Below, piece by piece: positions 12,108 to 47,065 of a stretch of 64,000 nucleotides of DNA. Below the pieces are notes generated by a model that saw only the letters and a list, made by a program, of their open reading frames with translations, did no database searches and had not been told where the DNA came from. The position numbers and the translations under genes were made by a program. The stretch covers positions 1 to 64,000 of the IMG/VR virus record IMGVR_UViG_3300042558_003926; one strand, written 5' to 3'. Within the stretch, counting starts at the first letter, position 1. Each line of letters begins with the position of its first letter.

Positions 12108-15100
12108 ATGGCAAATAAGGTAAAAATAGATTACTCTCAGTTTAGAGCATCCGGAGTCTACACCCTAGAATTTGATGCGTCCCAGAACGTAATCCTGACA
12201 TCACAGACAATACGTCTTGTTGTAGGATTTTCCAATAAGGGACCTTTCAATACACCGGTTTATATCCCAGATGTAACTACGCTAATTTCTATTTTTGGTG
12301 ACATCGATAGATCATTAGAAAATAAAGGATCTTTTTTCCAAAGATCTATATTAACATGTTTAAATGCAGGCCCAGTGTTTGCTTTAAATCTTTTAAGATT
12401 AAACGATGATACGGATTCAGCTAACCCTGATGAGGTTGATTACCAAGCATACTCACTTGACACCGAAGAGTATAATGGTGTTGTAACAAGCAGACTATAT
12501 TCATCCTACTATAATAAGGAAAGATTCTGGTTTGCTGATCCTAACTATTTCTTGGCTACACTTAGTGTTTCTGACCAGGGTAAATTGTTTAGCTTAGTTA
12601 ATCTAGGTAAATCACCTATGAGTATTATAGTTAGAAAATCTACGGATTCATCTAAGCCACTTAAGGGATATGACATATTCGCTATAGATTGGTATGGAGC
12701 TAACAATGTTCCTACTTTCATGCATCCATTTGACTACATGTCAGATTACTTTATTGATGTTATAGCAGTTTATGGAGATTGGACGAATTATCAGGCACTC
12801 TCTATAGATCCACAGTGGAGCACTTATTTTACCGAAAATGGATTTATTAAAAGCAGAATAGACAGCTTTTTATCTGAACCTGATGTTTCTATCGTTACAT
12901 CAGTAACAGGATGTATTATACCGGATTTCGTAGATCTTAATGGTGTTAATCAATATGTACAAACTCTGATTAATAATAGCACTCCATCTACTGGGTTATT
13001 CTGTGCTATAGACGAACAAGCATTTGATGATATTTGTGCTAATGGATCTAAAATAGATCTAGTCGGAAATCACCTTATCGACGAATTAACGGGAGATAGC
13101 GATTTACCTAGTCCTAGAATTAATTTCTTAAGCTACGATCAAGTTTTAGTTGCTGACTACCTATATACACAAAACGTAGTTGGAGTAACTGGAGCAACTG
13201 GATTTGTTAGTGCTACTGGTGCTACTGTTTATACATCAGGGGCAAAAGTTGGTACCTTATATACATTAACTGGAGTAACTGGTGCAACTGCAGGGGTTGT
13301 TTATCAATCTTTCGCTAATTACGACCCTAATGCTTATGATGGCGGATTACACTATCTTCAGACTTCTGGTACAGGCGGTACCGCTGGATATTTACAAACA
13401 GCTGCTCAGAAAAATGAACTTAAGACATTCTTAACTGTAACATCATCTAACGACCAGAAGTTCATTTTAGGTGTTGTATCTGGATATACCGGAGGTTTAA
13501 CTGGAGGATTGATAAATCAGTTTGCAGAGGGTGATTTAGTTAAGTTAAAAGTAACAGGAACTAAGGACGTATCTGGAGAATTAAGGATATTCTTCACCCA
13601 CCCATTAGATACCGGATTCTACCGATCACAAGGTATTACTGTAACACCGACATACAACTTAACTTCTTACAATACAGGAGCATCTGGAAGTAATCAACCT
13701 TTCTATACGGATGCTTATCAATTTGGTAATTCTGATTATGTTGATATCGTTAGCACATCTACACCTAATGGTGTAACTGGACCTAGCGCACCTCTCGGAG
13801 TTTCTAACGTATTAGTTGGATATAATGCTTCTTCTCTTTACCAGGATAACAAGTATGCTGAGATTACAGATGGCGATATCATCTGGACTAACAGTAGTGG
13901 ATCTAACGTTCAATATTTAGGGTTCGAACAAACTGTGGATAAGGATCAGTTCAATTATGTTAATACTAGAGCATTTACCAATGTTTCTTTAGCTGATACG
14001 ACAATAACAAATATAGCTGCATTCGGTACACCTTACGCATCTAACAACGTAGGTTTACCTGTAGGAACACAGAATACTGATATAGTTTCTCAGGAAGGTG
14101 CAATAAATGAATTTGTAGATTGTTCAAGAATCGACGTAACAACATTCTTGGTAACTCAAGATTCTAACGGAAACGCCCCTTTCTCGGTTGGAGATTTGGT
14201 GGTTTCAACTGACCTTGATATATGTGAGCCTTCTACCGGAAACAGACAAAATAGATTAGCTAAAATCACTACAGTTTCTGCTACAACTACTGCTGGAACT
14301 TTCAGAGTAACTTCAGCTAGACCGGTTCTTTATTATACTTCAGGATCTGGAGTTAGAGTTCAGAAATTTAAATCGATAGCTCAGTTTACAAGATCCTTTG
14401 ATTTTACATATCTGAGTGGATTCACAATGACAGACTGGCACAGACCTAATGGAAGTGATGCTAGAATATCTGAGATTCTTGATGTTATGTATAACACGAA
14501 TATTGCTAAGACATTAGCAGCTAAGGATGTTATATCTTACCGATACATCATTGATACATTCTCTGGGCAGATTTTACCAAACTCTAAATACCAGCTTTCT
14601 AGATTGGCTATGTTAAGACAACAGGCTTTGGCGATTATAAACGCTCCTTCTATGGCGCAATTTAGAGCTAGTACAGATCCAAGATTTACTGATGCTCCTA
14701 CTGCAGCTAATCCTTATCCGAGATTAAATACTGCTTATATAGCAGATGGCGGTAACTTATCTTTAAATCCGTCTTACACATTTAGCTTACCTTCAGAAGC
14801 TGATGGAGCTAAGTACGCAGCATTCTATTCTCCTTATATTACTGTAAGAGAAACTAATAGAAACGTTGAGGTACCACCTGCAGCATACGTTTCTAATAAC
14901 TTCCTTAGAAAATTCGCTAACGGAGAACCTTATGCTATTATAGCAGGTCAGAAACGTGGAGTAATTAGCGGAGGTAATATAGTAGGTGTTGAATATGACT
15001 TTACTGAAGAGGACAGAGGAAACTTAGAACCTTTCGGAATCAATCCAATCATCAAAAGAAGAGGAATTGGAGTAGTTATCTTCGGTAACCAAACTGCTTA

Positions 15101-15458
15101 TCAGCAAGTTAATTCAGCATTTAATCTTGTTCACGTTAGAGATCTATTGATTAGTGTAGAAAACGACGTTCAAGAGATCTTGGCTAACTACCTATTTGAT
15201 TTCAACGAAGATTCAATCAGACTAGAAATCAAAACATTAGTAGACAACTACCTAGATGGTGTTAGAGCTGGTGGTGGTATTTACGCTTACCAAACAATTA
15301 TGGATGCTTCTAATAATACCCCTGCAATCATAGATATGAACATGGGTATAATTGACGTCATAATAGAACCAGCAAGAGGAATCCAGAAGTTCATTAATCG
15401 AATCACGGTTACAAGAACTGGAGGAATTGCTTCTGGAGGATTCATACAATTTGTATAA
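12108..15458 (+). CDS. Contractile tail sheath protein (gp18-like) with large insertions
   Basis: SGVYTLEFD...VGFSNKGPFNTPV at the N-terminus; VPPAAYV, AGQKRG, GINPII, FGNQT, VHVRDLLI and LFDFNEDSIR at the C-terminus. Confidence 0.93.
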   Translation: MANKVKIDYSQFRASGVYTLEFDASQNVILTSQTIRLVVGFSNKGPFNTPVYIPDVTTLISIFGDIDRSLENKGSFFQRSILTCLNAGPVFALNLLRLNDDTDSANPDEVDYQAYSLDTEEYNGVVTSRLYSSYYNKERFWFADPNYFLATLSVSDQGKLFSLVNLGKSPMSIIVRKSTDSSKPLKGYDIFAIDWYGANNVPTFMHPFDYMSDYFIDVIAVYGDWTNYQALSIDPQWSTYFTENGFIKSRIDSFLSEPDVSIVTSVTGCIIPDFVDLNGVNQYVQTLINNSTPSTGLFCAIDEQAFDDICANGSKIDLVGNHLIDELTGDSDLPSPRINFLSYDQVLVADYLYTQNVVGVTGATGFVSATGATVYTSGAKVGTLYTLTGVTGATAGVVYQSFANYDPNAYDGGLHYLQTSGTGGTAGYLQTAAQKNELKTFLTVTSSNDQKFILGVVSGYTGGLTGGLINQFAEGDLVKLKVTGTKDVSGELRIFFTHPLDTGFYRSQGITVTPTYNLTSYNTGASGSNQPFYTDAYQFGNSDYVDIVSTSTPNGVTGPSAPLGVSNVLVGYNASSLYQDNKYAEITDGDIIWTNSSGSNVQYLGFEQTVDKDQFNYVNTRAFTNVSLADTTITNIAAFGTPYASNNVGLPVGTQNTDIVSQEGAINEFVDCSRIDVTTFLVTQDSNGNAPFSVGDLVVSTDLDICEPSTGNRQNRLAKITTVSATTTAGTFRVTSARPVLYYTSGSGVRVQKFKSIAQFTRSFDFTYLSGFTMTDWHRPNGSDARISEILDVMYNTNIAKTLAAKDVISYRYIIDTFSGQILPNSKYQLSRLAMLRQQALAIINAPSMAQFRASTDPRFTDAPTAANPYPRLNTAYIADGGNLSLNPSYTFSLPSEADGAKYAAFYSPYITVRETNRNVEVPPAAYVSNNFLRKFANGEPYAIIAGQKRGVISGGNIVGVEYDFTEEDRGNLEPFGINPIIKRRGIGVVIFGNQTAYQQVNSAFNLVHVRDLLISVENDVQEILANYLFDFNEDSIRLEIKTLVDNYLDGVRAGGGIYAYQTIMDASNNTPAIIDMNMGIIDVIIEPARGIQKFINRITVTRTGGIASGGFIQFV

Positions 15459-15480
15459 TTTATGATTTTTAAAGAAGGCA

Positions 15481-15488
15481 GATAAATA
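15481..15488 (+). promoter_or_regulatory. Putative late promoter GATAAATA
   Basis: One mismatch to T4 TATAAATA; 9 nt before the tube gene. Confidence 0.55.
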
Positions 15489-15497: not shown

Positions 15498-16052
15498 ATG
15501 GCAGGATTATCTCACTTTTCAAATTCGTTATCAGCAATAAATAGGTTTGAACCTGTTTATCTGAATCAATTCGAAGTTACTATTATACCACCAGCAGCAG
15601 TTGCCGGAGGTGAAATTTTACTTCAGCACGTATCCAAAGTAAGCGGTCTTTCTTTAGATAAGAACCCAGGACTTGCTACTCAGAAATTTAAGTTTGCTAA
15701 AAGAAATTACGCTGGAGCTAAGCCAGATCAGACATTCATGGATCTTAGTGTTAGTTTTTCTGTTAACTTGAACGATGATAACTCAATGTACGTTTTCAAA
15801 ACTCTGAGACAGTGGTCTGATTTAATTTACAATCCACTAACAGGAGCGATGGGATTAAAGAATGACTATGTAGGAACTATAGTAGTTAACATCTTTAATA
15901 AACAAGGTGATGTTTTTAGAAGGATTACTTGTAAAGATTGCTTTCTTACAAAGCCAATCTCTCCGATGAACCTAAACTATACATCAACTGACCTATACAA
16001 GATAGATGATATGGTATGGGCGGTGGACTACTGGGAGGATTTATTCCTATAA
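15498..16052 (+). CDS. Tail tube protein, paralog 1 (gp19-like)
   Basis: Follows the sheath; EPVYLNQFEV, LRQWSDLIYNPLTG..G.K.DYVG, DYWED. Confidence 0.85.
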   Translation: MAGLSHFSNSLSAINRFEPVYLNQFEVTIIPPAAVAGGEILLQHVSKVSGLSLDKNPGLATQKFKFAKRNYAGAKPDQTFMDLSVSFSVNLNDDNSMYVFKTLRQWSDLIYNPLTGAMGLKNDYVGTIVVNIFNKQGDVFRRITCKDCFLTKPISPMNLNYTSTDLYKIDDMVWAVDYWEDLFL

Positions 16053-16069: not shown

Positions 16070-16645
16070 ATGGCAGGACTACCACATTTTACCAATTCAA
16101 AAGCAGCTATAAGTAACTTCGAACCGGTTTATTTAAATCAGTTTGAGGTTATAATAAATCCACCTGCTGGTATAGTAGACGCCGCTACTACCTTTAACGG
16201 TGAGGGGATATTAGCTCAACAAGTTAAATCCATAACGGGTTTAGCAGTAGATATTTCTCCTGCAGCAACAATAGAGCAGAACTATAAGTTTGCTACAAGA
16301 AGATATGCAGGGGGTGAACCATCTACCACGGATATGACTCTTTCGATGGAATTTGAGGTCAATCTTAATGATCAAAATTCCATGACTGTTTATAAAATAC
16401 TAAGACAGTGGTCGGATCTAATTTACAACCCTCTAACTGGAGCTATGGGGATTAAATCAGATTATGTTGGATCTATGGTTATTCAGGTATTTAACAAAAG
16501 AGGTGACGTTTTTAGAAGAATAAGAATACCTTCTTGCTTTTTAAGTGAAGCTATAAATGCAATGGAGTTAGATTATGAGACCCCAGCAATATATAACCTT
16601 ACTGCTAGTTGGATCTGTGATTACTGGGAAGATACCTTCTTATAA
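16070..16645 (+). CDS. Tail tube protein, paralog 2 (gp19-like)
   Basis: Shares the same blocks as 15498..16052. Confidence 0.85.
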   Translation: MAGLPHFTNSKAAISNFEPVYLNQFEVIINPPAGIVDAATTFNGEGILAQQVKSITGLAVDISPAATIEQNYKFATRRYAGGEPSTTDMTLSMEFEVNLNDQNSMTVYKILRQWSDLIYNPLTGAMGIKSDYVGSMVIQVFNKRGDVFRRIRIPSCFLSEAINAMELDYETPAIYNLTASWICDYWEDTFL

Positions 16646-23706: not shown

Positions 23707-24375
23707 TTGGCAGATAACCAGAATAATAATTTTTATGGTGGAAGTGCTTCCGATATAGGATCTGAACTTTTTGCAGGAGGTAGCGCAGCATATCCGATGG
23801 ATCCTTTAGGTGGATCTACCGGTGGGTTTGTTACCCGATATACTAACATAGCTGAAATAACTCGGGATCTTGAGAGAGTTGAGGCAACTTTTAAAAGATT
23901 TAATGATCCGACAGAAATAAAATTCATAAAGGAGTCATTCCGTGTAACACAGCAGTCACAGACACTAAATTACGTAGATTTAGTAGATTTTTTCCATCCT
24001 CTCCAGGATTTCTCTGAATTTCAGAAAGTCTCAATGGTTATCGGTCCTAGATCATCAGCAAATCTAGATCCCGGATCTTTCTACGGAACTACGGGTGAGG
24101 TTTCCATGTTAATAGCAAGAGCATATTATCTTCCAGAAACACCGGAAGATCAGAAGGTTCTTTTCTGGGATTATAAGGCAAACGAGAGAAATATAATGGG
24201 AGAATTTATGGTCTTAACAGGAGCGGTTAAGAACGGGTCTCAATGGAGAGGATGGGACGTGGATCCTTTCTCTACTTACGGACACACAGGTAATGCTAAT
24301 AGCTCTGATGGTGGATTTATATTCACCAACCCCACTGACTACAACGTCAAGTTAACAGTAATAGCAGCAAACTAA
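23707..24375 (+). CDS. Putative virion protein, paralog of 24377..24862
   Basis: Shares MGE(F/L)M(V/I)L(T/S)G, GW and DGGxxFxNPxxD with the next gene. Confidence 0.6.
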   Translation: MADNQNNNFYGGSASDIGSELFAGGSAAYPMDPLGGSTGGFVTRYTNIAEITRDLERVEATFKRFNDPTEIKFIKESFRVTQQSQTLNYVDLVDFFHPLQDFSEFQKVSMVIGPRSSANLDPGSFYGTTGEVSMLIARAYYLPETPEDQKVLFWDYKANERNIMGEFMVLTGAVKNGSQWRGWDVDPFSTYGHTGNANSSDGGFIFTNPTDYNVKLTVIAAN

Positions 24376-24940: not shown

Positions 24941-27571
24941 ATGGAATTCTTAAACCAGGTAAAAAAGCTAAAAGACACAACAAAATCTGCTGAAGTCAAA
25001 GCTCTTTGCGAAAATTTCCTTAATGGTGGATCTGTTTCTAAGGAGTTATTGATTGAATCTTTAGAGAATCACAATATATCTAATGATACCGTGAGCAATG
25101 TACAAAGCCACGTAGATGCTATAAGAAACGAAGAAATGGAAGCTTCAAGAAGAGTAGCAGAGTCAATTATGGAGTCTTGGGGCGGAATAAACAATAACAA
25201 ATCATTGGGTAATGCTGGATCATATGGCTCATTAAACGAGGCAGAAATGACAGATCCTGCTGCAGTAGAGAAAGCTTATAAGACAATAAAGAAAGGCGAG
25301 AAAGGGGAAAGAGTAAAAGAATTACAAATCTATCTTGCTGTACCAAATCCAGATGGTATTTTTGGACCAGCCCTAGAAACTAAAGTTAAGGAATTCCAAA
25401 AAGCTAATGGATTAACCACAGATGGTATGGTTGGAATTGCCACAATGAAAAAAATCATTGAGGTCTTAGGTAAGAAAAAGACTTTGGTTGACCAGATAAA
25501 AGAGATAGGAAAGAAATTCATTAGTGCTATAACTTCTGTAAAGGAAGAGGAATCATTCTTACAGGAGCTTGGAAGAGTAAGTTCGATTGATGGATCTGCA
25601 CAAGGGTTTTTAAAATCAAACGAGATTAATAATCTTGGTGTATTAGAATCTATTGGTATGATAAAAACATCATCCATCTATACATACCCTAAAGCTAGAA
25701 TTATATGCGAGCAATATCAGAATCTTATAGTAAATAAGAGAATACCTGAATTCGCATTAGTTCATAATTTTTTGAATGATATTCAACCTCTAAACTGGGA
25801 CGATACTGTTAAAGGAGTTTCCTCGGGTCTTATGGAAAAAGCAGAGACACTTTCAAGAGAGATCGAGGTTTCTAAAGTTATTGAATCAATAAAAAACACA
25901 GGAAGCTCCGCTTTCTATTCCGATCTTAATGATATTCTTAATGAGTGGTTAGTTTCCGAGAGTAAATCAAATGCCCTATTAGTTAAAAATATTTCTAAGT
26001 GGTCATTTAATCCAGTTGTTAGAAACTTAATCAACTTTATAAATGTAAATGAGAACACAGATAATAGAAGATTGGAAATTCCTACTATAGCTCAAGGAGA
26101 ATCTAGTGTATCTAGAGTTTTCTCTCCTGTTATGTTAGGGAGTCATAAATCTATCTTCTATCTAGGAGGAAACGTTTTTGAATCTAATTCTGCTGACATT
26201 AAGAAGCTAACAAGAAAAGAAGTTGCTGGCTTATCTAGCGATTATATTCAATTGATAGAATCTTTCAACAGACAATACGTTAGAGTTAACGAGGAAGGGA
26301 TTTTCGTTCAGTTAGGTAAAAGCACTGTTAGAATAATAGAGGAAGGAGAGGAAGTATCAGTTTATTTAGGAAAGAGAAAACTTAAATTTGGCGATCCTTC
26401 TGGATTAGCTAAAATATTAGGCTTAGAGTCAGCTACATATTTTGGAGTAAATGAAACTCAGGTCGTATCAGATATTATGAGACTTTACACTAACTACCAA
26501 AATATAGTTGAACTTGATTTCGCCAAGAGCATAGAATCAAATGTATTTGAAGGACTTGCTATCAATCTAATTAAATGGAATAATCAAATTTATCTTCAGA
26601 AGATTAACCAAGGAATGAATGAAAATTCAATCTATAAGGTTACTGGAAATCAGGCAGTATCAATGGTTAAGGAATTTATGAGATATGATATCTCTGAGGG
26701 ATTAACAGAATTTTTAGTTGGAGAAAATAGGGTTAAATCTATTATGGTAAATGACAGAAACAAGGTTATTGAGAACATTTCCAAAGTAGAGGAACAAATA
26801 AACAAGTTAGAAACATTAATGTCAACTAACCCTCTATATTCTGCTTCGCCTGAGATTATGTCAGCTAAAAAACTATTAGAGAATGAGCTTAACGTTCTTA
26901 GAGAGAAGTGGAACCAAATTAATATAGAGATATCTTCAGCTGAATCAACTATAGAATTGGAGAATTCTTTAGAAATCTTTGAAGATGAGAAATTTAACAT
27001 TGGCGATTTTATTAAAGTTAAAGAATCGGGAGATACTGGTAAGATAATTTCTATAGATGCTACTTCGGGAAGATACACGGTTCTTCTAGATACCGGTAAA
27101 ACTTCAGATTTTCTAATCAGTGAAATTACTGATTTAGAAGAGGCTCTTAGTCAAGCAGCTGAAGATAATGCTGATTCTTCGGATGAGGACGATTCAGAAG
27201 AGGAAGTAAAAGAGAACTTTGATATGTTAAGCGGTAACGGAAACAAACTTAACAAATCAGAAATGCCTCTATCAGATCAGAAGAAACTTTTGACTGATTT
27301 TTCAAAAGGGCATGGATTTTCTAAAGCCCCTGGAGATCATAAAGGAACAATCGACATGAAGATGGATTCGCTACATGGGTACAATTCAACGATGAATGAA
27401 GATGAGGGCTCAAAAAAAAACCCCAGTCGTAACTTCTACTTCGCTCCAAAATCAGAAGATCAGAATAAAAAAGGAAACCCTTTCGTCCAATCCTCTAAAG
27501 GAAAACTAAGCAAGGCACCAACAGGAAAAAACATAGTAGAAGAAGAGGAAGAGGGAGGAGAAAAGGAATAA
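24941..27571 (+). CDS. Large putative head/virion protein with peptidoglycan-binding (PG_binding_1-like) domain
   Basis: IKKGEKGERVKELQ..L...DGIFGPALETKVKEFQKANGLTTDGMVG; several (L/I/M)xE putative prohead-protease sites. Confidence 0.7.
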   Translation: MEFLNQVKKLKDTTKSAEVKALCENFLNGGSVSKELLIESLENHNISNDTVSNVQSHVDAIRNEEMEASRRVAESIMESWGGINNNKSLGNAGSYGSLNEAEMTDPAAVEKAYKTIKKGEKGERVKELQIYLAVPNPDGIFGPALETKVKEFQKANGLTTDGMVGIATMKKIIEVLGKKKTLVDQIKEIGKKFISAITSVKEEESFLQELGRVSSIDGSAQGFLKSNEINNLGVLESIGMIKTSSIYTYPKARIICEQYQNLIVNKRIPEFALVHNFLNDIQPLNWDDTVKGVSSGLMEKAETLSREIEVSKVIESIKNTGSSAFYSDLNDILNEWLVSESKSNALLVKNISKWSFNPVVRNLINFINVNENTDNRRLEIPTIAQGESSVSRVFSPVMLGSHKSIFYLGGNVFESNSADIKKLTRKEVAGLSSDYIQLIESFNRQYVRVNEEGIFVQLGKSTVRIIEEGEEVSVYLGKRKLKFGDPSGLAKILGLESATYFGVNETQVVSDIMRLYTNYQNIVELDFAKSIESNVFEGLAINLIKWNNQIYLQKINQGMNENSIYKVTGNQAVSMVKEFMRYDISEGLTEFLVGENRVKSIMVNDRNKVIENISKVEEQINKLETLMSTNPLYSASPEIMSAKKLLENELNVLREKWNQINIEISSAESTIELENSLEIFEDEKFNIGDFIKVKESGDTGKIISIDATSGRYTVLLDTGKTSDFLISEITDLEEALSQAAEDNADSSDEDDSEEEVKENFDMLSGNGNKLNKSEMPLSDQKKLLTDFSKGHGFSKAPGDHKGTIDMKMDSLHGYNSTMNEDEGSKKNPSRNFYFAPKSEDQNKKGNPFVQSSKGKLSKAPTGKNIVEEEEEGGEKE

Positions 27572-40490: not shown

Positions 40491-43208
40491 ATGATAATTA
40501 TTTTACCAAAGAACACAGAATATAATCTAGGGAACGATTTTCCCTTGATTACCATACCTATGACCATGGAGAATGCTGAATCAGCATCGTTTGAAGATTT
40601 CCAGTGGTGGTCGTATTCTAAGGATTTTAGAAATTGGTTGAAAGCAAATCCAAGACAATGGGTAGCAGACTCCGAGGATCTCTCTAAATATTCAGGTAGC
40701 TTAACTGAATACCTAAGAGAGTGTATGGAAAGATATGATGAGGAGTCCTTACTATCAGAATCTAGCGTTATATCTTTTGAAGATTTTGAAAGGATGCTCT
40801 CAGAAAATGAAAATCTTTTCGAGGATGATGGGGATTCGGGAGCAGCTAGTGTGGACGACCAAGCTACTGTAAAAGAAGCGGTAAAATTTCACTTTGCATA
40901 CAATAAATTAAAAAGTGATGGAACTTTAAAAGAATCTGCTACTGCTGATCAAATAGCTACAGGCGACGATAAAGCGGTATTTTTAGTTTTAGAAGATCCT
41001 GAGAGTAAGGAAAATCTTTTAGAGACTTTAAAAGCATTTAGAATGAAAGGATTCACCGATACCGCAGCTGAATCTAAATTTACATTAATAAATGTTACTG
41101 AGATGGTTCCTGGTGGACCGGTTGCAGAAGATGACTCCCCTGAAAATGTCGTGGGTAAGATAGTTCAGGATGCTACAATTTTAGCAACAACTGCTGGTGC
41201 GGGGGTTCTTATCTTTGGTGCTCTTAAAGTAGCTGGTGGAGCTTTAGGAACACAGGCTTTGTTAAAAACAATCAGGGGATTCTCCCCTAGTGCAGCTGCT
41301 AAAGCGGCTTCCACCGCAGCTAAACCTGGCCTTTGGAGTAAAGCAGGAAAATTTACAGCAGGTAAACTCAAGAGTATCTGGGGTATAGCCAAAGAAATGG
41401 CTACACTTAAAAATACAAGGATAGCAGCTCAGGGTGCAGCAAGAGGTTTCAGAGGAGCTAAAGCCGCTTTCATGCTAGGAAAACAGGGAGTAGGTGGAGC
41501 GATTAAAGCTTTCGGTAAAGGATTCGCTAGAGGATTTTCTAAAGCAGGAGGTAAAGCAATACCTTTCGTAGGTGAGGTACTTATGGTTATCGATGCTGTG
41601 GGTTCTACTTGGAACTGGTTTAGTTCCAATCAGGCACCTAGATATGGCGAGGTTGATAGTTTTGCGCACAACTCATTAGATCCTGCATCAATACCGGTTG
41701 GAGTTCCTATCACTATATGCTGGTCACAGCCTGCAGGTGGATGGGGTGGAGCTGCAGTAAGCTTTTTCTTCAGTAATGAAACTAGAACTACATGCGAGCT
41801 TGTAAAGATTGGAGTTAGAGATAACTATTCAATATTCATATTAACTCAGGTTAACTCTGCAGAGGTTCAGAAACAGCTAGCATCTCACGATCTAGTTTTG
41901 ATTGCTTTGGATAACAGCGATAAAGTTAATGAGCAACCAGAGGATGCGGGAAATATACTTACAAAAGCTGCTAAATACGTTCAGAGAACATTTGACAACG
42001 AGGATATGGACTTTAAAATGTCTTTTGTTGATGGAATCGATAAGATTGCAGCATTATTCAATTTCCAGGGTATGTGCGATTGGAACACATTCATATCGGA
42101 ATACAATAACGCATCAGACCAGTTAATAATAGCTGACGAAAACGCTCCTGCAACATATCAGTTTTATTATACAGATTCAGAGGATAATATTATTAACGTA
42201 GCGGGAAGACTATTAACCAGCGAAGAATTAGCTACTACTTCAGATACGGATATAGAAAAGATATTTTACCCTATAGAAGGAGGTGAGGATGTCTTCGGTA
42301 AAGTTAAGAAAAGAGGGGAAGGTGAAGTAGCAGAAGAATCCGAGGGATTTGATTCTTATGGACTAAACATATTGATGGAATCATCCGGAGTTATAACTAG
42401 CTTTTCTGATTTCAATTCATCTTTAACAAAGGCTAATTTGGGAATTTTTGAGGCTGGAGGATCTTCTGGAAATCCCGATGAGGGATCAGGAGACCCAGAT
42501 TCACAGGGAGTAGGCGCAAGTACTGCTGATCTTAGCCCAGATGATAAAATGGAGCCTGCAAAGGTAGCAATCTATAAGGTAACCGATAGAGAATATGCAA
42601 ATCCAGAGCTTAGAAAATATAAAGCAGGAGTATTTACCCAATTTATTCTTACGGAGGAATCTTTTGATGCTAAAGCTAATGAATCGATTGGTGTAGACGT
42701 TAATACTACAGGGGAGGACCTAGAAGATCCTAGAAGAGGGGTTTATGCTTATAAGAGAAAAGAAGATACACCGAAACCTCCGGTTGATCCTGATAAGGAT
42801 AAGGATAAAGATAAAGATAAGGAAGAAGACGTAAAAAGGGACCAACAGCCTGACGTCGAAAAAACGGAGGATGACTACTTCTTAAAAGTTAATCCTAAGG
42901 ATGTAGAGATTAAAGATAAAAGAAATTCTACAGTTATTAGAGATAAGAGCGTAGAAGGTGGTATAAACATCTTAGACGAGTTCTTAGATGCTAAGAAAAA
43001 AGAGATATTAGGTATCTCAGATTGGAAAGCAATTACTTTCGCTAAATCGATGTTAGATGCTAAAGGAGAAGTTACTGAAGTTAAATTAAAGAACAGATTT
43101 GCTCCGTTTGGTGATAAGATAAGAAAATATAGAGTTACTGATGGCGAATCATTCGAGATAGCTAAGAAATTTGCTGAAGATGTTGAAGCCAGAATAAAAT
43201 ATGAATAA
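40491..43208 (+). CDS. Large putative internal/ejection protein with Gly/Ala-rich hydrophobic segments
   Basis: GAGVLIFGALKVAGGALG and GKAIPFVGEVLMVIDAVG; acidic flanks; GATATATA at 40422. Confidence 0.6.
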   Translation: MIIILPKNTEYNLGNDFPLITIPMTMENAESASFEDFQWWSYSKDFRNWLKANPRQWVADSEDLSKYSGSLTEYLRECMERYDEESLLSESSVISFEDFERMLSENENLFEDDGDSGAASVDDQATVKEAVKFHFAYNKLKSDGTLKESATADQIATGDDKAVFLVLEDPESKENLLETLKAFRMKGFTDTAAESKFTLINVTEMVPGGPVAEDDSPENVVGKIVQDATILATTAGAGVLIFGALKVAGGALGTQALLKTIRGFSPSAAAKAASTAAKPGLWSKAGKFTAGKLKSIWGIAKEMATLKNTRIAAQGAARGFRGAKAAFMLGKQGVGGAIKAFGKGFARGFSKAGGKAIPFVGEVLMVIDAVGSTWNWFSSNQAPRYGEVDSFAHNSLDPASIPVGVPITICWSQPAGGWGGAAVSFFFSNETRTTCELVKIGVRDNYSIFILTQVNSAEVQKQLASHDLVLIALDNSDKVNEQPEDAGNILTKAAKYVQRTFDNEDMDFKMSFVDGIDKIAALFNFQGMCDWNTFISEYNNASDQLIIADENAPATYQFYYTDSEDNIINVAGRLLTSEELATTSDTDIEKIFYPIEGGEDVFGKVKKRGEGEVAEESEGFDSYGLNILMESSGVITSFSDFNSSLTKANLGIFEAGGSSGNPDEGSGDPDSQGVGASTADLSPDDKMEPAKVAIYKVTDREYANPELRKYKAGVFTQFILTEESFDAKANESIGVDVNTTGEDLEDPRRGVYAYKRKEDTPKPPVDPDKDKDKDKDKEEDVKRDQQPDVEKTEDDYFLKVNPKDVEIKDKRNSTVIRDKSVEGGINILDEFLDAKKKEILGISDWKAITFAKSMLDAKGEVTEVKLKNRFAPFGDKIRKYRVTDGESFEIAKKFAEDVEARIKYE

Positions 43209-43243
43209 TCGCAGAAATGATAAAAAATATCTGAACGATTGTT

Positions 43244-43251
43244 GATATATA
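43244..43251 (+). promoter_or_regulatory. Putative late promoter GATATATA
   Basis: Upstream of the protease/capsid operon. Confidence 0.7.
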
Positions 43252-43276
43252 AATGACATAAAAAAGAAAAAATAAA

Positions 43277-45307
43277 ATGCCAACAACTCAAAGACTTAAT
43301 GAAGAATTGGTTTTCATTCTTGAAAGACAAGAACTTTTCCTTGAATCCAAAAAGGAGGGATCTAGCGATTATGTTCTAGAGGGTATTGCTGCTGTTTTCG
43401 GTAAAGAAAATAACAATAATCGAATCTACGAGGAAAAAGAATATCTACCTCACTTGGATTACCTTAGAGATAAGATCAAGCAGAGAAGATTAGTTGGTGA
43501 ATTAGACCACCCTGAAAAATTCGACGTTTCACTTAAGAACATTTCTCATATCATAGAGAAGCTAGATTACGATAAGGGAAATAGACAACTTAAAATTAAA
43601 GTTAGATTATTGGACACCCCTGCTGGAAAAATAGCTAAGAATTTAGTTGATGCTGGAGTTCCTTTATCTATATCTTCTAGAGCTGCTGGATCAGTTGGTG
43701 GAGATAAGAAAGTACAGATTAAAAAGATATTCACTTACGATCTAGTTGCAGATCCTGGTTTTCAAGACGCACAGTTAGAAAGAGTATATGAGAGTGCAGG
43801 TTTCACTTATGAAGAATTCTTCGCAAAGAGAAATAACACTATCCTAAACACACTAACTTGCTTAAATGAATCTCTAGGTCTGGAAAACGAATCCCCAGTG
43901 AAGATATATAGAGTTGAAAACAACGAAGAATTTAATAAACTCGTGAAAACAGACAAAAATAAAACATCCCTTATGGAGAATAATGAATTTGTTACCGCTG
44001 ATGAATTGAATCAATATTCCATCTTTCTTAAGAAGGAAATGGATTCGATGAAAAATGAGCTGACAACTATTAGACAACAAAGAAATTCTATTACTGAATC
44101 TAATAGCGATTATTCTAAATCTTTGGTTAGCCAACTTGAGAATAGAGTAGCTAAGTTAGAGAAATATTCAGAATATCTTGCTGAGAATTTAGATAACGCA
44201 ATTAAATACGGAGAATATCTTGCTGAGAATTTAGATCAGAGCATTAATTACAGTAAGTATTTAGCTGAGAACTTAGATAAGAATATTTCTTATTCTAAAT
44301 ATCTTTCTGAAAACGTAGATAAAAACATTTCTTATTCTAAATATCTTGCTGAGAACGTAGATAAGTCAATCAGCTATACTGAGTATGTAGCAGAGAACGT
44401 AGATAGAAATATCGAATACTCTAAATACTTAGCTGAAAAATTAGACCACTCTATCCAATATTCTGAATATTTAGCTGAAAACGTTGATAACAACATCGCA
44501 TACAGCGAGCATATTGCAGAAAATGTTAATAGCGGAATTGCTTATACCGAGTATGTAGCTGAAAAACTAAACGACGGTATTGAATACAGTGAGTATCTTG
44601 CTGAGAATTTGAGTAAAACTATTTCTTATACTGACTATTTAGCAGAAAATCTAAATAGAGGTTTAGATTACTCGGAGTACTTAGCTGAAAAAGTTAAAAG
44701 AGGTATTGATTACACAGAATACATCGCAGAAAGCATTAATGGCTCAGCATCTGGATTAGATATGGGTACATCTTCTGTTCCTCACGTAGGCAACTTAAGA
44801 GAAAATGTTGATGTTAGCTATCATGCAGGACTAAACGAGTCTGGATTTGCTGGAAGCTACGACAATCTTACTTCAAGAATAGATAATTTGATTGAATCGG
44901 TTAAAACACAAAAAACCGAGTCAAATATAAACGAGGCTGCTTCTAGATTTCAGTCTCAAGCCAATACACAAAAGGCTCAAACAGGTGTTCTAAATGAATC
45001 AATTAACGAAGGAGCAACAGGTCTTAAATTTATTGATGAAATGCCAGAGGAATACACTTCAATTTGGGAGTCTCTAAACGAAGGGCATAAGCAATCAATC
45101 ATTGCTCAAAGCCACTTCTACAGATTAGATACTGCATACCAAATTAAGAATTTCTGGTCTACTCGTCAATTAGGAGCTAAAACTTTCGGAGTTCAAAAAT
45201 TGGACGAGAACGAGAATCTAAATGAAAATAACGCTACGCAAGGCTACTCAAGTGATTATATGAATTACATAGCTTCAGCGTTAGAACAAAAATTTCAAAA
45301 AAGGTAA
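43277..45307 (+). CDS. Prohead protease (gp21-like) fused to scaffold/core domain
   Basis: LEGI, NNNNRIY, GELDHP, SHII, LDTPAGKI, ISSRAAGSV, TYDLVADPGF, followed by coiled-coil repeats. Confidence 0.9.
   Translation: MPTTQRLNEELVFILERQELFLESKKEGSSDYVLEGIAAVFGKENNNNRIYEEKEYLPHLDYLRDKIKQRRLVGELDHPEKFDVSLKNISHIIEKLDYDKGNRQLKIKVRLLDTPAGKIAKNLVDAGVPLSISSRAAGSVGGDKKVQIKKIFTYDLVADPGFQDAQLERVYESAGFTYEEFFAKRNNTILNTLTCLNESLGLENESPVKIYRVENNEEFNKLVKTDKNKTSLMENNEFVTADELNQYSIFLKKEMDSMKNELTTIRQQRNSITESNSDYSKSLVSQLENRVAKLEKYSEYLAENLDNAIKYGEYLAENLDQSINYSKYLAENLDKNISYSKYLSENVDKNISYSKYLAENVDKSISYTEYVAENVDRNIEYSKYLAEKLDHSIQYSEYLAENVDNNIAYSEHIAENVNSGIAYTEYVAEKLNDGIEYSEYLAENLSKTISYTDYLAENLNRGLDYSEYLAEKVKRGIDYTEYIAESINGSASGLDMGTSSVPHVGNLRENVDVSYHAGLNESGFAGSYDNLTSRIDNLIESVKTQKTESNINEAASRFQSQANTQKAQTGVLNESINEGATGLKFIDEMPEEYTSIWESLNEGHKQSIIAQSHFYRLDTAYQIKNFWSTRQLGAKTFGVQKLDENENLNENNATQGYSSDYMNYIASALEQKFQKR
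44165..44752 (+). repeat. 14 x 42-bp coding repeat, Y(S/T)(E/K)Y(L/V/I)AE(N/K)(L/V)xxxIx
   Basis: Counted from the translation, from YSEYLAENLDNAIK to YTEYIAESINGSAS. Confidence 0.9.
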
Positions 45308-45325
45308 AAAAAATAGAAAACAATC

Positions 45326-47065
45326 ATGAAACTGATTAACGAACAAGAAATCTATGATACCTGGTCTCCGATTATCGAGAGCAAAGCTGGTATCACAGAA
45401 GAAAGCAAAAAAGGTTGGTTGACTAAATACTGTCACTACCATTCATTAAACGAATCTGCTGGAGCTTATAACACTCTTGGTGTTGTAAACGGTATGGGTA
45501 ACGTTGCCCCACCAGCATTCCCTGGTGCTACTATTGGTGGTACTTCATTCTCAACAGGCGCTAACGCTGGTTTCTACAACACAGCTTGGCAAGGATCTGG
45601 AGATAAATTCCCTTCACTTCTTCCATTGGCTATTCAGGTAGCTGCGAAGACTGTAGGTTTTGATATCGTTCCAGTTATTCCTATGTCTGGTCCTACTGGT
45701 ATCTTGTCTTACTTAGACTACGTATACGCAGGTGGTAAAACTAACGCTGCTACTGCTGCTACATCTGGAGACAGTTTAGCAAAAGCTCCAGCTATGATTA
45801 AATTCCCAGTTTATCAAACTGCTTTAGGTACTGGTGTTACTGGTGCTACTGCAGGTACATTTACTGTTGGACAAAATTACGCTCTTACTAACGGTGGTAC
45901 AATAAACTTATTGTTTGTTGGTCTATCAAGAATTGACGGTTTCCCTATATTCGAGATCAATCCTTCTACAGTTGGTGGTGTAACTGGTATAACTGATGGC
46001 TATAACGTAGCTGGTATCATCAACGGTACTCCTGCTCAAGTAGGTTCTAGCGGATTCTATACTGGTGCTACTTCAGTTAACTACTTAGCTCAGTTAGTTA
46101 AAGGTCTAGAAGATCACATCCAAGGTTTCTCCGGTGCTGGTTTCAATAACACCGACGCTTGGCAAGGTCCTTACGTAGATGGTACTAAGACTTACAACCC
46201 GATGTTAAGAGGTGTTGGTGAGTCTACTTACTACAACTCAATGGGTCTATCGACTTTCACTAAGTTCGTAGAAGCTGAAACTTTCCAAGTAGCTGCTTCT
46301 GTTACAACTGAGCAAATCCAAGACCTTAACAAACAATTCGGTATCGACGTTATCTCAATGATCGAGAACGCATTGGTTAATGAGGTATCTCAGTCTATTA
46401 ACAAGCACATCCTTTCTAGAGCATTCGCTTTAGGTTGGTCTAACCACATCCAGTTCAACAATGTTGAAAACCAAAACTTGAACTTGAACTTGGTAATCGG
46501 TGGTGGTTCTGGTACTACATCAGCTTACGTTAAGAAAGACGATACTACTGGAACTATGGTTATCCCTGGTGGTCCTGCTTCAGGAGGTTACGAGAACTTG
46601 TCAACTTTACAAAGAAGACTATTCTCAAGAATCCTTGCAGCTGCAAACGTAGTAGCTAACAGAGGTCGTAGAGGTCCTGCTAACTTCATCGTTACTAACG
46701 CTGCAGTAGCAAGTGCACTTCAAGATATCTCTCAGTTCACTTTCGCTCCATTCTCTAACACGTTAACTCAAAATAACGGTACTTTATACCCTGTAGGTTC
46801 ACTTGCTGGTATGACCGTTTACGTAGATCAGAACATGAGATACGACGATACACGTGTATGTATTGGTAGAAAAGGTGGTGACGATGAGCCAGGATTGAAA
46901 TTCATGCCTTACATGATGGCTGAGTCAATTCAGACTATCTCTGAAGGTACAATGTCACCTAAAATCGCGGTTAAATCAAGATACGCTCTAGTTGAAGCTG
47001 GTTTCTTACCAGAGACTATGTACTTGACATTCTATGTTAACGTACCTGCTGGAGGTTTAGCTTAA
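45326..47065 (+). CDS. Major capsid protein (T4 gp23-like)
   Basis: WSPIIE, V.PMSGPTG, TTEQIQDL, EV.QSINK, RRGPANFIV, KIAVKSRYAL; strongly biased codon usage. Confidence 0.93.
   Translation: MKLINEQEIYDTWSPIIESKAGITEESKKGWLTKYCHYHSLNESAGAYNTLGVVNGMGNVAPPAFPGATIGGTSFSTGANAGFYNTAWQGSGDKFPSLLPLAIQVAAKTVGFDIVPVIPMSGPTGILSYLDYVYAGGKTNAATAATSGDSLAKAPAMIKFPVYQTALGTGVTGATAGTFTVGQNYALTNGGTINLLFVGLSRIDGFPIFEINPSTVGGVTGITDGYNVAGIINGTPAQVGSSGFYTGATSVNYLAQLVKGLEDHIQGFSGAGFNNTDAWQGPYVDGTKTYNPMLRGVGESTYYNSMGLSTFTKFVEAETFQVAASVTTEQIQDLNKQFGIDVISMIENALVNEVSQSINKHILSRAFALGWSNHIQFNNVENQNLNLNLVIGGGSGTTSAYVKKDDTTGTMVIPGGPASGGYENLSTLQRRLFSRILAAANVVANRGRRGPANFIVTNAAVASALQDISQFTFAPFSNTLTQNNGTLYPVGSLAGMTVYVDQNMRYDDTRVCIGRKGGDDEPGLKFMPYMMAESIQTISEGTMSPKIAVKSRYALVEAGFLPETMYLTFYVNVPAGGLA

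What the first reader, a model, noticed from the sequence alone, without database searches (positions are those of the whole stretch)
13160..45856. Identical octapeptide GVTGATAG and related G-x-T-G motifs in the insertion regions of both sheath and capsid
Seen: GVTGATAG is encoded at 13272-13295 (sheath) and 45833-45856 (capsid) with different codons. Nearby are GVTGATG, SATGAT, SGYTGGLTGG, NTGASG and GVTGPS in the sheath, GGVTGIT and YTGAT in the capsid, and GGSTGG, GTTGE and GHTGN in 23707. These cluster in segments outside the conserved cores. Inference: unrelated surface proteins converging on one Thr-Gly motif suggests a shared modification sequon (O-glycosylation by phage glycosyltransferases) or a docking site for a decoration protein. 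This would extend the sulfo-glycan hypothesis to the whole virion.
Basis: partly seen in the sequence, partly recalled or inferred. Interest (0 to 1): 0.6.

Follow-up and report, generated by a model that had tools for sequence, protein, structure and literature searches.

The report
Shared Gly-X-Thr motif on virion proteins
A jumbo phage from a widespread environmental clade carries the same short glycine-x-threonine-glycine loop motif many times in its tail sheath, capsid and probable fibre proteins, far more often than chance allows; this may mark sugar-attachment sites, but no modification has been shown.

Summary
The shared peptide is a 9-mer, TGVTGATAG, in the sheath (aa 388-396) and the gp23-like capsid (aa 169-177). 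A third copy, TGSTGATAG, sits in an unrelated 1828-aa protein outside the window.

G-x-T-G occurs 82 times in the 289.7-kb genome against about 29 expected. The excess is Thr-specific and lies entirely in the structural module: 62 against 14-18 expected there, and 15 against 15 elsewhere. T4, MaF61, PTm1 and LR756500 lack this excess, while two in-clade genomes share it.

The motif is a short Gly-X-Thr (bacterial-collagen type) triplet run with 9-bp DNA periodicity. In the models it falls in coil or turn segments of lineage-specific insertions. It is conserved amid variable flanks in three unrelated families. Across orthologues many sites turn over while their density is kept, and Thr is replaced mainly by Ser.

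All six clade genomes examined encode a GmaR/SunS-like GT2-TPR glycosyltransferase, and five outgroup phages lack it. Variable glycan or sulfation cassettes sit beside the neck-terminase-sheath genes.

My best reading (about 0.4) is that these are O-glycosylation acceptor loops, as in BclA-type G-X-T triplets. A purely structural turn motif is nearly as likely (about 0.35). Nothing here demonstrates modification.

The parts
12108..15458 (+). Tail sheath gene (1116 aa). The lineage-specific central region, about aa 100-750, carries the motifs.
   Evidence: PHROG 34521 E 5e-120; Pfam Phage_sheath_1C aa 1001-1102. Least conserved region is aa 351-750.
13182..13226 (+). Sheath aa 359-373: a degenerate Gly-X-Thr triplet run that includes GVTGATG and SATGAT. 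Some homologues have 6-7 perfect G-X-Y triplets here.
   Evidence: 9-bp tandem periodicity at 13181-13202 and 13210-13227. AF2 gives short strands and turns, pLDDT 82-92.
13269..13295 (+). Sheath nonapeptide TGVTGATAG (aa 388-396).
   Evidence: Coil at aa 387-394 leading into a strand, pLDDT about 86. Homologues keep G-x-TAG-[VI]. 9-bp repeat at 13267-13290.
13479..13508 (+). Sheath SGYTGGLTGG (aa 458-467), two overlapping-register G-x-T-G sites.
   Evidence: Coil directly after strand 451-458. GLTG is kept in 115-118 of 120 homologues.
13671..13688 (+). Sheath NTGASG (aa 522-527).
   Evidence: A looser variant of the motif, not a G-x-T-G site.
13770..13787 (+). Sheath GVTGPS (aa 555-560).
   Evidence: Mostly coil, pLDDT about 88. 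Thr is kept in 105 of 120 homologues.
45326..47065 (+). Major capsid protein, T4 gp23-like (579 aa). Aa 143-301 lies between blocks that align to T4 gp23 residues 137 and 246, which is the insertion-domain region.
   Evidence: Pfam Gp23 E 2e-41; phmmer alignment to T4 gp23; AF2 pLDDT 80 and Foldseek top hits T4 gp23.
45830..45856 (+). Capsid nonapeptide TGVTGATAG (aa 169-177).
   Evidence: G-x-TGAT-[AS]-GTF is at least 90% conserved in 120 homologues while flanks vary. Coil, pLDDT 70-75. 9-bp repeat at 45829-45851. Absent from homologues below 60% identity.
45974..45994 (+). Capsid GGVTGIT (aa 217-223), in a hypervariable stretch.
   Evidence: 9-bp repeat at 45976-45995. The GGV part is an insertion seen in only 1 of the 120 homologues.
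46058..46072 (+). Capsid YTGAT (aa 245-249).
45689..45700 (+). Capsid core GPTG (aa 122-125). It is invariant and matches T4 gp23 SPTG, so it is a structural site and not part of the lineage-specific set.
23707..24375 (+). ORF of 222 aa with three G-x-T-G sites (GSTG aa 36-39, GTTG aa 127-130, GHTG aa 192-195). Function unknown; an orthologue is present in relative G002.
   Evidence: (3 observed against 0.15 expected).
2..700 (+). Collagen-like (Gly-Ser-Ser / Gly-Thr-Ser / Gly-Ala-Ser)n array of at least 74 triplets. It is cut by the contig start and is in frame with ORF 761-2923, which has a Peptidase_S74 chaperone domain. This is a tail fibre.
   Evidence: TRF 9-bp array at 1-671; translation; Pfam S74 E 3e-13.
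2934..5186 (+). Sulfation cassette between the fibre and the neck/terminase/sheath genes: sulfotransferase 2934-3755, APS kinase 4364-4816, ATP-sulfurylase/cytidylyltransferase-like 4788-5186.
   Evidence: The same slot in relatives holds GT2/GT2/GT1/GT9, or a 2OG-Fe(II) oxygenase plus GT1.

Best explanation
Shown: the motif is a short run of Gly-X-Thr triplets, the triplet type typical of bacterial collagen-like proteins, usually 1-3 units long. It is encoded by imperfect 9-bp tandem repeats. In the two models it sits in coil or turn segments flanked by beta-strands, inside lineage-specific insertions of the sheath and the gp23-like capsid. It also recurs in large proteins downstream of the baseplate wedge gene. 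It is kept by selection at the peptide level in three unrelated families and is a clade-wide trait.

Inferred mechanism: the Thr hydroxyls of these G-X-T loops are acceptor sites for phage-encoded protein O-glycosylation. The likely initiating enzyme is the clade-conserved GT2-TPR protein (G000 129750-131033), whose nearest solved relatives are the flagellin O-GlcNAc transferase GmaR and the peptide glycosyltransferase SunS. The other glycosyltransferases, the methyltransferase fusion, and the strain-variable cassette next to the sheath operon (sulfation genes in this genome) would then extend or decorate the glycan. The long Ser/Thr-rich collagen-like fibre next to that cassette would be the main substrate. 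The short G-X-T loops in sheath, capsid and fibres would be copies of the same acceptor written into other virion proteins. The identical nonapeptide would then be convergence on an enzyme-preferred sequence, not common descent.
For: Statistics: (62 observed against 14-18 expected in the structural module; 15 against 15 elsewhere; Thr-specific).

Peptide-level selection: codons are diverse and there is no out-of-frame excess. Conservation amid variable flanks holds in the capsid, in the 1828-aa protein down to about 45% identity, and partly in the sheath.

Triplet grammar and 9-bp periodicity.

Coil or turn location at good pLDDT.

Clade specificity: own genome 2.8x, G004 3.0x, G002 2.8x, against T4 1.55x, MaF61 1.68x, PTm1 0.83x, LR756500 1.73x.

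Site turnover with maintained density: about two thirds of sites are private to one lineage in orthologues at 37-67% identity, each with 5-15 sites against about 1 expected.

Thr substitutions are mainly Ser (89), then Ala (41), with Val 12 and Ile not among the ten commonest residues.

Enzymes: the GT2-TPR matches GmaR at E 3.9e-6 and SunS at E 4.5e-4, with the VDTGS and DAD motifs aligned and TPR matches at aa 214-320. It is present at 62-87% identity in 5 of 5 in-clade genomes and in 0 of 5 outgroup phages. There are further GT2 genes, a GT1-FkbM fusion, a sulfotransferase and PAPS-synthesis genes. Variable glycan cassettes occupy the same late-operon slot in relatives.

Precedents: Thr in BclA3 GPT triplets is O-GlcNAcylated by the adjacent SgtA (PMC7157674). 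GmaR glycosylates flagellin through a GT domain followed by TPRs (PMC9638930). Mycobacteriophage virions are glycosylated (as summarised in PMC12619734).
Against: No glycan, mass shift or enzyme-substrate contact has been observed. All evidence is sequence-based and circumstantial.

The enzyme/motif co-occurrence rests on one clade, so it counts as one evolutionary event.

The GmaR and SunS matches are weak. They lie far below NCBIfam equivalog cut-offs (27 bits against 350), and the TPR hits are below Pfam thresholds. Such an enzyme could equally target host proteins or a small peptide.

Many sites lie in well-ordered turns (pLDDT 82-92). They are often preceded by an aromatic or other beta-strand-type residue and have V, A, P, L or I at the x position, which suits a structural turn.

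One G-P-T-G is a conserved core site shared with T4. Ordinary phages already show a 1.5-1.7x baseline excess.

A relative whose sheath has only 2 sites still carries a rich glycosyltransferase cassette. The sulfotransferase is missing from 2 of 5 relatives.

The virion status of the large 74-103 kb proteins is inferred from synteny only.
Confidence: 0.4

Rival explanations
1. Purely structural motif. Phi-G-x-T-G is a favoured strand-end plus tight-turn (or PPII-like) element. In this lineage it is repeatedly generated by 9-bp slippage, perhaps seeded from the phage's many collagen-like repeat genes, and kept because it makes stable, hydrated surface loops. No modification is involved, and the shared nonapeptide is convergence within a very small alphabet (G, T, A, V, S).
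For: 9-bp periodicity and triplet-sized indels. Sites lie at strand-turn junctions with high pLDDT. The residue before the first G is enriched for Tyr and other aromatics, and the x position is hydrophobic or small. The core GPTG site is shared with T4. Thr is the predominant Y residue in bacterial collagen for structural reasons (PMC8968730). True collagen-like runs are present in fibres of the same genome. There is a baseline 1.5-1.7x excess in other phages.
Against: It does not explain why the excess is confined to this clade and to sheath, capsid and fibre-module proteins. It does not explain why the same 8-9 residues, including the off-register ATAG/ATSG tail, are conserved in three unrelated folds. 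It does not explain why new private sites keep arising at 3-7 per protein against about 1 expected. It does not explain why Ser, rather than beta-branched Ile or Val, is the main replacement for Thr.
Confidence: 0.35
2. Docking site. The motif is bound non-covalently by one accessory or decoration protein (or by an assembly chaperone) that coats capsid, sheath and fibres.
For: The same conserved peptide occurs in three unrelated virion proteins and is restricted to particular virion components.
Against: No candidate binding partner was identified. One decoration protein binding lattices of different symmetry on head, sheath and fibres has no precedent known to me. Rapid site turnover fits poorly with stoichiometric lattice binding. 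The interaction test could not be run.
Confidence: 0.06
3. Common descent or recent DNA transfer. The motif-bearing segments belong to one mobile small domain (as with Ig-like domains on phage structural proteins), or were copied between genes by gene conversion.
For: hhalign of the capsid and 1828-aa regions aligns 28 columns at 50% identity around the motif. The sheath and capsid 27-mers share 23/27 nt.
Against: hhalign probabilities are only 1-11%. BLAST aligns nothing beyond the 9-mer. Identity at third codon positions (5 of 9) is roughly what I estimated by hand from the codon usage (about 3 of 9 expected); this was not formally tested. The surrounding folds are unrelated (gp23 insertion region against sheath insertion).
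Confidence: 0.04
4. Chance or composition. Gly/Thr/Ala-rich low-complexity loops produce the matches without any selection.
For: The segments are rich in G, T and A. The pair of proteins was picked after the fact.
Against: Local block shuffles that preserve 12-residue composition give 18 +/- 4 against 62 observed. None of 2000 shuffles shares more than 7 residues. G.SG and G.AG are not enriched. The excess recurs in two diverged relatives and in orthologous proteins. The motif is more conserved than its flanks.
Confidence: 0.02

Closest known systems
BclA / BclA3 exosporium glycoproteins (Bacillus, Clostridioides): collagen-like G-X-T (mostly GPT) triplets O-glycosylated on Thr by an adjacently encoded glycosyltransferase (SgtA)
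   Same: The Gly-X-Thr triplet is the repeated unit. Thr or Ser hydroxyl is the acceptor (SgtA also accepts Ser). The glycan enzymes are encoded next to a Ser/Thr-rich collagen-like surface fibre. The structure is surface-exposed. (PMC7157674, PMC8968730.)
   Different: In this phage most sites are isolated runs of 1-3 triplets in loops of globular, non-trimeric proteins (sheath, capsid), too short for a triple helix. The x position is mostly V or A rather than P. No glycan has been shown. The candidate enzyme resembles GmaR/SunS; it could not be compared with SgtA.
Mycobacteriophage virion glycosylation (Freeman et al. 2023, as summarised in PMC12619734; the original paper is not held in the library)
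   Same: Phage-encoded glycosyltransferases modify major virion proteins to form a glycan coat.
   Different: There the glycans are on C-terminal extensions of capsid and tail-tube subunits of siphophages. Here the motifs are internal loops of capsid, sheath and fibre-module proteins of a jumbo myophage, and the tail tube has none.
Collagen-like Gly-X-Y regions in phage and prophage tail fibres
   Same: This genome has genuine examples: an array of at least 74 triplets in the S74-chaperone fibre, and 10-11-triplet runs in three paralogous fibre-like proteins. Prophage collagen-like tail fibres are described in PMC3368898.
   Different: The finding concerns micro-runs inside the sheath and major capsid protein, where a collagen triple helix is not expected.
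GmaR (Listeria flagellin O-GlcNAc transferase) and SunS (SPbeta sublancin S-glycosyltransferase): GT2 catalytic domain followed by TPRs
   Same: The phage protein at G000 129750-131033 has an N-terminal GT2 domain with aligned VDTGS and DAD motifs, followed by TPR-like repeats. GmaR and SunS are its best matches among solved structures (PMC9638930).
   Different: Similarity is weak (29 and 22 bits). The protein is shorter than GmaR and lacks its antirepressor domain. Its substrate is unknown.
T4 gp23 insertion region and T4 gp18 outer domains
   Same: The motifs lie in the segment between the blocks aligned to T4 gp23 residues 137 and 246, and in the central, non-core part of the sheath. From my own knowledge of the T4 structures, these parts face outward in T4.
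   Different: T4 has no such motif excess (1.55x genome-wide, no protein with more than 2 sites). The insertions here are larger and lineage-specific.

Membership tests
T4 gp23-like major capsid protein (Pfam PF07068) | Sequence match over the family's gathering threshold, and an HK97-like fold with an insertion domain | tested here: met
   143 bits against a 24.4 cut-off. AF2 model pLDDT 80, Foldseek top hits T4 gp23, E 4e-18.
Contractile tail sheath | Conserved C-terminal sheath domain, and gene position upstream of the tail tube | tested here: met
   PHROG 34521 E 5e-120. Pfam Phage_sheath_1C scores 22.8 bits, below its 26.9 cut-off. Tail-tube paralogues follow at 15498 and 16070. The AF2 core is poorly modelled.
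Collagen-like triple helix (Gly-X-Y)n | An uninterrupted Gly-X-Y run long enough for a triple helix (roughly 6-10 or more triplets) in a trimeric protein | tested here: not met
   Sheath and capsid sites are 1-3 triplets. The sheath aa 359-379 run is interrupted in this genome, although perfect over 6-7 triplets in some homologues. The feature is met only by the fibres: at least 74 triplets at window 2-700, and 10-11 triplets in the proteins at 97537, 99136 and 100806.
G-X-T O-glycosylation acceptor (BclA/BclA3 type) | Thr at the Y position of Gly-X-Y triplets on an exposed surface | tested here: inconclusive
   The sequence pattern is met. Sites fall in coil or turn segments of the models.
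G-X-T O-glycosylation acceptor (BclA/BclA3 type) | A dedicated protein glycosyltransferase encoded with the substrate | tested here: inconclusive
   A candidate GT2-TPR resembling GmaR/SunS is conserved in 6 of 6 clade genomes, and glycan cassettes sit beside the structural genes. No link to the substrate has been shown.
G-X-T O-glycosylation acceptor (BclA/BclA3 type) | Glycan covalently attached to the Thr | not testable with these tools
   Requires mass spectrometry or glycan staining of virions or recombinant proteins.
Mycobacteriophage-type virion glycosylation | Acceptor region is a C-terminal extension of capsid and tail-tube subunits | tested here: not met
   The motifs are internal. 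The tail-tube paralogues have no G-x-T-G site.
Shared mobile surface domain (Ig-like domain type) | Detectable homology of the motif-bearing segments between the different virion proteins | tested here: not met
   hhalign probabilities are 1.2%, 11.3% and 0.9%. BLAST aligns only the 9-mer.
'Moraphage' lineage of aquatic jumbo phages (PMC12619734) | Near-core genes such as lysyl-tRNA ligase and glutamine synthetase | tested here: not met
   No match to PF00152 or PF00120 in the genome. Kinship with Lak, Flavobacterium and Tenacibaculum phages is shared, so membership is not claimed.

The most novel reading that the evidence does not exclude
An abundant clade of environmental jumbo phages (probably infecting Bacteroidota, judging only from their named relatives) coats its exterior with a phage-made O-glycan, covering capsid, contractile sheath, baseplate-distal proteins and collagen-like fibres. 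It does so by writing one minimal sequon, the bacterial-collagen triplet Gly-X-Thr followed by Gly, into surface loops of unrelated proteins. A GmaR/SunS-like GT2-TPR enzyme starts the glycan. A strain-variable cassette (sulfation here; GT2/GT1/GT9, or hydroxylase plus GT1, in relatives) diversifies it like a serotype locus.
Probability: 0.3. Interest if true: 0.8.

Novelty: new variant of a known kind. Interest (0 to 1): 0.55.

Why it matters
Virion glycosylation is documented for only a few phages, on terminal extensions, and no sequon has been defined.

If the Gly-X-Thr loops are acceptors, this would give a simple sequence rule for predicting glycosylated phage surfaces from metagenomes. 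It would also provide a candidate initiating enzyme and a variable glycan cassette. Together these would explain why glycosyltransferase and sulfation genes sit inside structural operons of a very abundant uncultured phage clade (thousands of capsid homologues in public data). That bears on phage adhesion, aggregation, grazing resistance and recognition by hosts.

If the motif is purely structural, it is still a clear case of one loop-building peptide spreading convergently through unrelated virion proteins by 9-bp repeat slippage.

Either outcome can be tested with a few recombinant constructs.

Tried and rejected
1. DNA-level motif (methylation or recombination site): rejected. The Thr-Gly pair is encoded by 11 different hexamers, with no excess out of frame or on the antisense strand.

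2. Shared domain: rejected.

3. General property of gp23-like capsids or of phage structural proteins: rejected. 104 diverse capsid representatives give 1.35x, and T4, MaF61, PTm1 and LR756500 give 0.8-1.7x.

4. Internal repeats inflating the counts in the large proteins: none found by self-BLAST. Only three fibre paralogues share N-terminal collagen-like runs, and these were masked in later tests.

5. Fold of the motif-bearing sheath domain: the VIA-align wide search gave nothing above Z 6.3, and nothing at all for aa 350-660. This is inconclusive and no evidence of a new fold. The sheath core was poorly modelled (mean pLDDT 52), probably because the alignment lacked diversity.

6. Solvent accessibility: not computed, because model coordinates are not exposed to the scripts.

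No verdict.

8. Function of ORF 23707: no Pfam or PHROG hit, and Atlas scores below 0.9.

9. Solved homologues of the 1401-, 1358- and 1828-aa proteins: none, apart from a beta-propeller repeat match.

10. Moraphage membership: not supported.

11. Freeman et al. 2023 could not be read. PMC8402811 proved irrelevant.

12. Correlation of sheath motif count with the neighbouring cassette: none seen in two relatives.

The reads tools were not used. Only genetic code 11 was used.

Full report
**Setting.** The window is the first 64 kb of a single 289,651-bp viral contig with 37% GC, rated complete by CheckV. ORF 12108-15458 is a 1116-aa tail sheath (PHROG 34521, E 5e-120). ORF 45326-47065 is a 579-aa T4 gp23-like major capsid protein (Pfam Gp23, E 2e-41). 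The nearest named relatives are the uncultured megaphage LR756500, the Lak Prevotella phages, and Flavobacterium, Tenacibaculum and Chryseobacterium phages, at 27-45% capsid identity. Public metagenomes hold thousands of close capsid homologues (3701 hits; the top 120 are at least 82% identical). All translations used code 11.

**Check of the observation.** Both coordinates translate to GVTGATAG. The identity is actually nine residues, TGVTGATAG: sheath aa 388-396 and capsid aa 169-177.
- The DNA is 23/27 identical, and the four differences are synonymous third positions.
- BLAST aligns nothing beyond the 9-mer.
- Among 361 ORFs called with my own simple script, it is the only 9-mer shared by proteins without BLAST-detectable similarity, apart from one adjacent gene pair.
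- In 2000 shuffles preserving 20- or 40-residue local composition, the two proteins never shared more than 7 residues.
- A third near-copy, TGSTGATAG, lies at aa 482-490 of an unrelated 1828-aa protein at G000 92047-97533, outside the window.
- The pentapeptide GATAG occurs five times against 0.1 expected, always in the first 110 kb.

**The general motif.** G-x-T-G occurs 82 times genome-wide against 29 expected from each protein's composition (z 9.7).
- The excess is Thr-specific: G.SG is 1.17x, G.AG 0.8x and G.VG 0.75x. G.TG is the top gapped tetrapeptide not explained by a leucine-rich-repeat-like (LRR-like) paralogue family elsewhere in the genome.
- With long collagen-like runs masked, the first 110 kb hold 62 sites against 13.8 expected (4.5x). 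The remaining 180 kb hold 15 against 14.7.
- Block shuffles that preserve composition within 12 residues still give only 18.0 +/- 4.0, with a maximum of 29 in 300.
- The sites concentrate in particular proteins: the sheath (6), the capsid (3), ORF 23707 (3), and large proteins at 74-103 kb (10, 10, 5, 6, 4 and so on).
- That 74-103 kb block begins directly after a baseplate wedge gene (PHROG 219, E 9e-28) and ends before the DNA helicase. Three of its members have tail-fibre PHROG hits and collagen-like N-termini. I therefore take the block to be the baseplate-distal and fibre module. This is inferred from synteny only, because no solved homologues exist.
- Tail-tube paralogues, a tape-measure-like protein, two portal paralogues, terminase and neck protein have no site.
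- The Thr-Gly pair is written with 11 different hexamers and shows no out-of-frame excess, so selection acts on the peptide.

**Grammar and origin.** Around the fixed G-x-T-G, Gly is enriched at -6, -3, +6 and +9, and Thr at -1, +5 and +11. The unit is therefore a Gly-X-Thr triplet, the form typical of bacterial collagen-like proteins, where Thr is the predominant Y residue (PMC8968730).
- Tandem Repeats Finder detects 9-bp periodicity exactly under the motif segments: 13181-13202, 13210-13227 and 13267-13290 in the sheath; 45829-45851 and 45976-45995 in the capsid.
- Homologues differ by triplet-sized indels. In some sheath homologues, aa 359-379 is a perfect run of 6-7 G-X-Y triplets.
- The genome also has true collagen-like arrays. 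There are 10-11 triplets in three fibre paralogues. The window itself starts inside an array of at least 74 triplets (Gly-Ser-Ser, Gly-Thr-Ser, Gly-Ala-Ser), in frame with the S74-chaperone fibre ORF 761-2923.

**Structure.** The capsid model (pLDDT 80; Foldseek top hits T4 gp23) puts aa 164-183 in coil between strands, at pLDDT 70-75.
- The phmmer alignment to T4 gp23 places aa 143-301 between T4 residues 137 and 246, the insertion-domain region. It also shows that the invariant core GPTG (aa 122-125) equals T4's SPTG, a structural site.
- The sheath model is poor overall (pLDDT 52) but confident for aa 350-750 (pLDDT 80-94). There every motif lies in coil or at strand-turn junctions of a small beta-meander.
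- No clear fold match was found for that domain.
That these regions face outward is inferred from what I know of the T4 gp23 and gp18 architectures.

**Conservation.**
- In 120 capsid homologues (82-98% identity), G-x-TGAT-[AS]-GTF is at least 90% conserved while both flanks vary. The x position is free (A, V, T, L or I).
- In capsids below 60% identity, the same loop is hypervariable and lacks the motif.
- In 120 sheath homologues (66-99% identity), the nonapeptide varies but keeps G-x-TAG-[VI].
- In 82 homologues of the 1828-aa protein, SATGSTGAT-[SAM]-GSLVI is kept down to about 45% identity.
- Profile-profile comparison of the three motif regions gives probabilities of 1-11%, so no shared domain is detected.
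- At the Thr position the replacements are Ser 89, Ala 41, Gly 22 and Val 12, and Ile is not among the ten commonest residues.

**Phylogenetic extent.**
- T4 (1.55x), Flavobacterium phage MaF61 (1.68x), Tenacibaculum phage PTm1 (0.83x) and LR756500 (1.73x over its first 381 kb) show only a weak baseline. None has a protein with more than 4 sites.
- 104 diverse gp23-like capsids give 1.35x.
- Two complete in-clade genomes were analysed. G004 (capsid 71%, sheath about 60-67% identity depending on the alignment) shows 3.0x, and G002 (capsid 83%, sheath about 79%) shows 2.8x. In both, the excess lies in orthologues of the same proteins (12-15, 8-12 and 7-8 sites).
- In alignments of these orthologues (37-67% identity), only about a third of sites are shared. 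Each lineage has 3-7 private sites per protein where about 1 is expected. Density is maintained while positions turn over.

**Enzymes.**
- The genome encodes three GT2 proteins, a GT1-FkbM methyltransferase fusion, a sulfotransferase, an APS kinase and an ATP-sulfurylase-like protein.
- The sulfation genes (2934-5186) lie between the collagen-like fibre and the neck, terminase and sheath genes.
- In two relatives the same slot holds GT2, GT2, GT1 and a faint GT9, or a prolyl-hydroxylase-type 2OG-Fe(II) oxygenase plus GT1. The sulfotransferase is present in 3 of 5 relatives.
- One GT2 (G000 129750-131033, 427 aa) has TPR-like repeats at aa 214-320. Its best solved relatives are GmaR (E 3.9e-6) and SunS (E 4.5e-4), with the VDTGS and DAD motifs aligned.
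- GmaR is the Listeria flagellin GlcNAc transferase, built as a GT domain followed by TPRs (PMC9638930). SunS is annotated as a peptide S-glycosyltransferase.
- This gene is present at 62-87% identity in 5 of 5 in-clade genomes. It is absent at E 0.01 from MaF61, T4, PTm1, LR756500 and PAU.

**Interpretation.** Chance, a DNA-level signal, a shared domain and a general property of phage structural proteins are excluded or unsupported. What remains is a clade-specific, peptide-level, Thr-specific motif in coil or turn segments of sheath, capsid and fibre-module proteins.

Several observations point to recognition by a common trans-acting factor:
- convergent conservation of the same 8-9 residues in three unrelated folds;
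- the Thr-to-Ser replacement pattern;
- the maintained density despite site turnover;
- co-occurrence with a protein-type glycosyltransferase;
- glycan cassettes inside the structural region.

The best precedent is O-glycosylation of G-X-T triplets in BclA3 by the adjacent SgtA (PMC7157674). I put this reading at about 0.4.

A purely structural strand-end and turn motif, spread by 9-bp slippage, is nearly as likely (about 0.35). It is favoured by the ordered turns, the hydrophobic x position and the residue before the first G, the T4-like core site, and the baseline excess in other phages. A docking site (0.06), common descent (0.04) and chance (0.02) are minor.

No modification has been shown. 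The enzyme/motif association is a single phylogenetic event. The complex prediction could not be run.

**Novelty and verdict.** Collagen-like fibres on phages, G-X-T glycosylation in spore proteins, and virion glycosylation in mycobacteriophages are all known (the last as summarised in PMC12619734). I have not found a description of a minimal G-X-T motif spread convergently over the sheath, the major capsid protein and fibre-module proteins of a jumbo phage clade. I therefore rate it a new variant of a known kind. Interest is moderate to good, because the signal is robust and the test is simple. Membership in the 'moraphage' lineage is not claimed.

Noticed in passing
window 2-2923: The contig begins inside a collagen-like array of at least 74 triplets (Gly-Ser-Ser, Gly-Thr-Ser, Gly-Ala-Ser; 9-bp DNA period). 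It is in frame with a fibre ORF that ends in a Peptidase_S74 intramolecular chaperone domain. The assembly probably broke in this repeat. Joining the contig ends gives only 11 further open codons and no start codon. Relative G002 has an 87-triplet counterpart.
   Followed up: partly
window 2934-6512: A sulfation cassette lies inside the structural region: sulfotransferase (2934-3755), APS kinase (4364-4816), ATP-sulfurylase/cytidylyltransferase-like protein (4788-5186) and a DUF2061 membrane protein (5183-5632), plus two ORFs with no family.
   Followed up: partly
L065 1-4685 and L066 1-4774 (relatives, upstream of neck-terminase-sheath): The slot that holds the sulfation cassette in this genome holds GT2, GT2, GT1 and a faint GT9 in one relative. 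In another it holds a 2OG-Fe(II) oxygenase (prolyl-hydroxylase type) plus GT1. This is a strain-variable glycan-enzyme locus reminiscent of a serotype locus.
   Followed up: partly
G000:C1:129750-131033 (outside the window; locus L008 1387-2667): A GT2 glycosyltransferase with TPR-like repeats. Its nearest solved relatives are GmaR (flagellin GlcNAc transferase) and SunS (peptide S-glycosyltransferase). It is conserved at 62-87% identity in five in-clade genomes and absent from five outgroup phages.
   Followed up: yes
window 29170-30843 and 30866-32476: Two adjacent paralogous genes share several 7-mers. The first is a portal protein (PHROG 213, E 3e-56). A tandem portal duplication is unusual. 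The second copy was not scanned on its own.
   Followed up: partly
window 15498-16052 and 16070-16645: Two adjacent paralogous tail-tube genes sharing 10-mers lie directly after the sheath gene. The same pair is present in relatives L065 and L066.
   Followed up: partly
window 44170-44364: 42-bp tandem repeats (about 3.6 copies, 79-80% matches) lie inside the C-terminal half of the head maturation protease gene (43277-45307).
   Followed up: no
G000:C1:234424-239281 and 273173-274696 (outside the window): A family of 8-9 paralogous genes has leucine-rich-repeat-like units (recurrent NNQLTSLEGAPQ-type segments). It dominates the genome's shared k-mers.
   Followed up: no
window 24941-27571: An 876-aa protein with an endolysin-like domain (aa 100-187) lies just downstream of ORF 23707. 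It is probably a tail-associated lysin or baseplate hub protein, which suggests ORF 23707 belongs to the tail/baseplate module.
   Followed up: no
G002 (IMG/VR relative) ORF 43077-43913: A 278-aa protein in a relative carries a 31-triplet Gly-X-Thr collagen-like run rich in GAT and GPT units. It uses the same triplets as the short motifs in sheath and capsid.
   Followed up: no
G000:C1:159787-161724 (outside the window; locus L009): A fusion of a GT1 glycosyltransferase with an FkbM-family methyltransferase, which suggests a methylated sugar in whatever glycan the phage makes.
   Followed up: no
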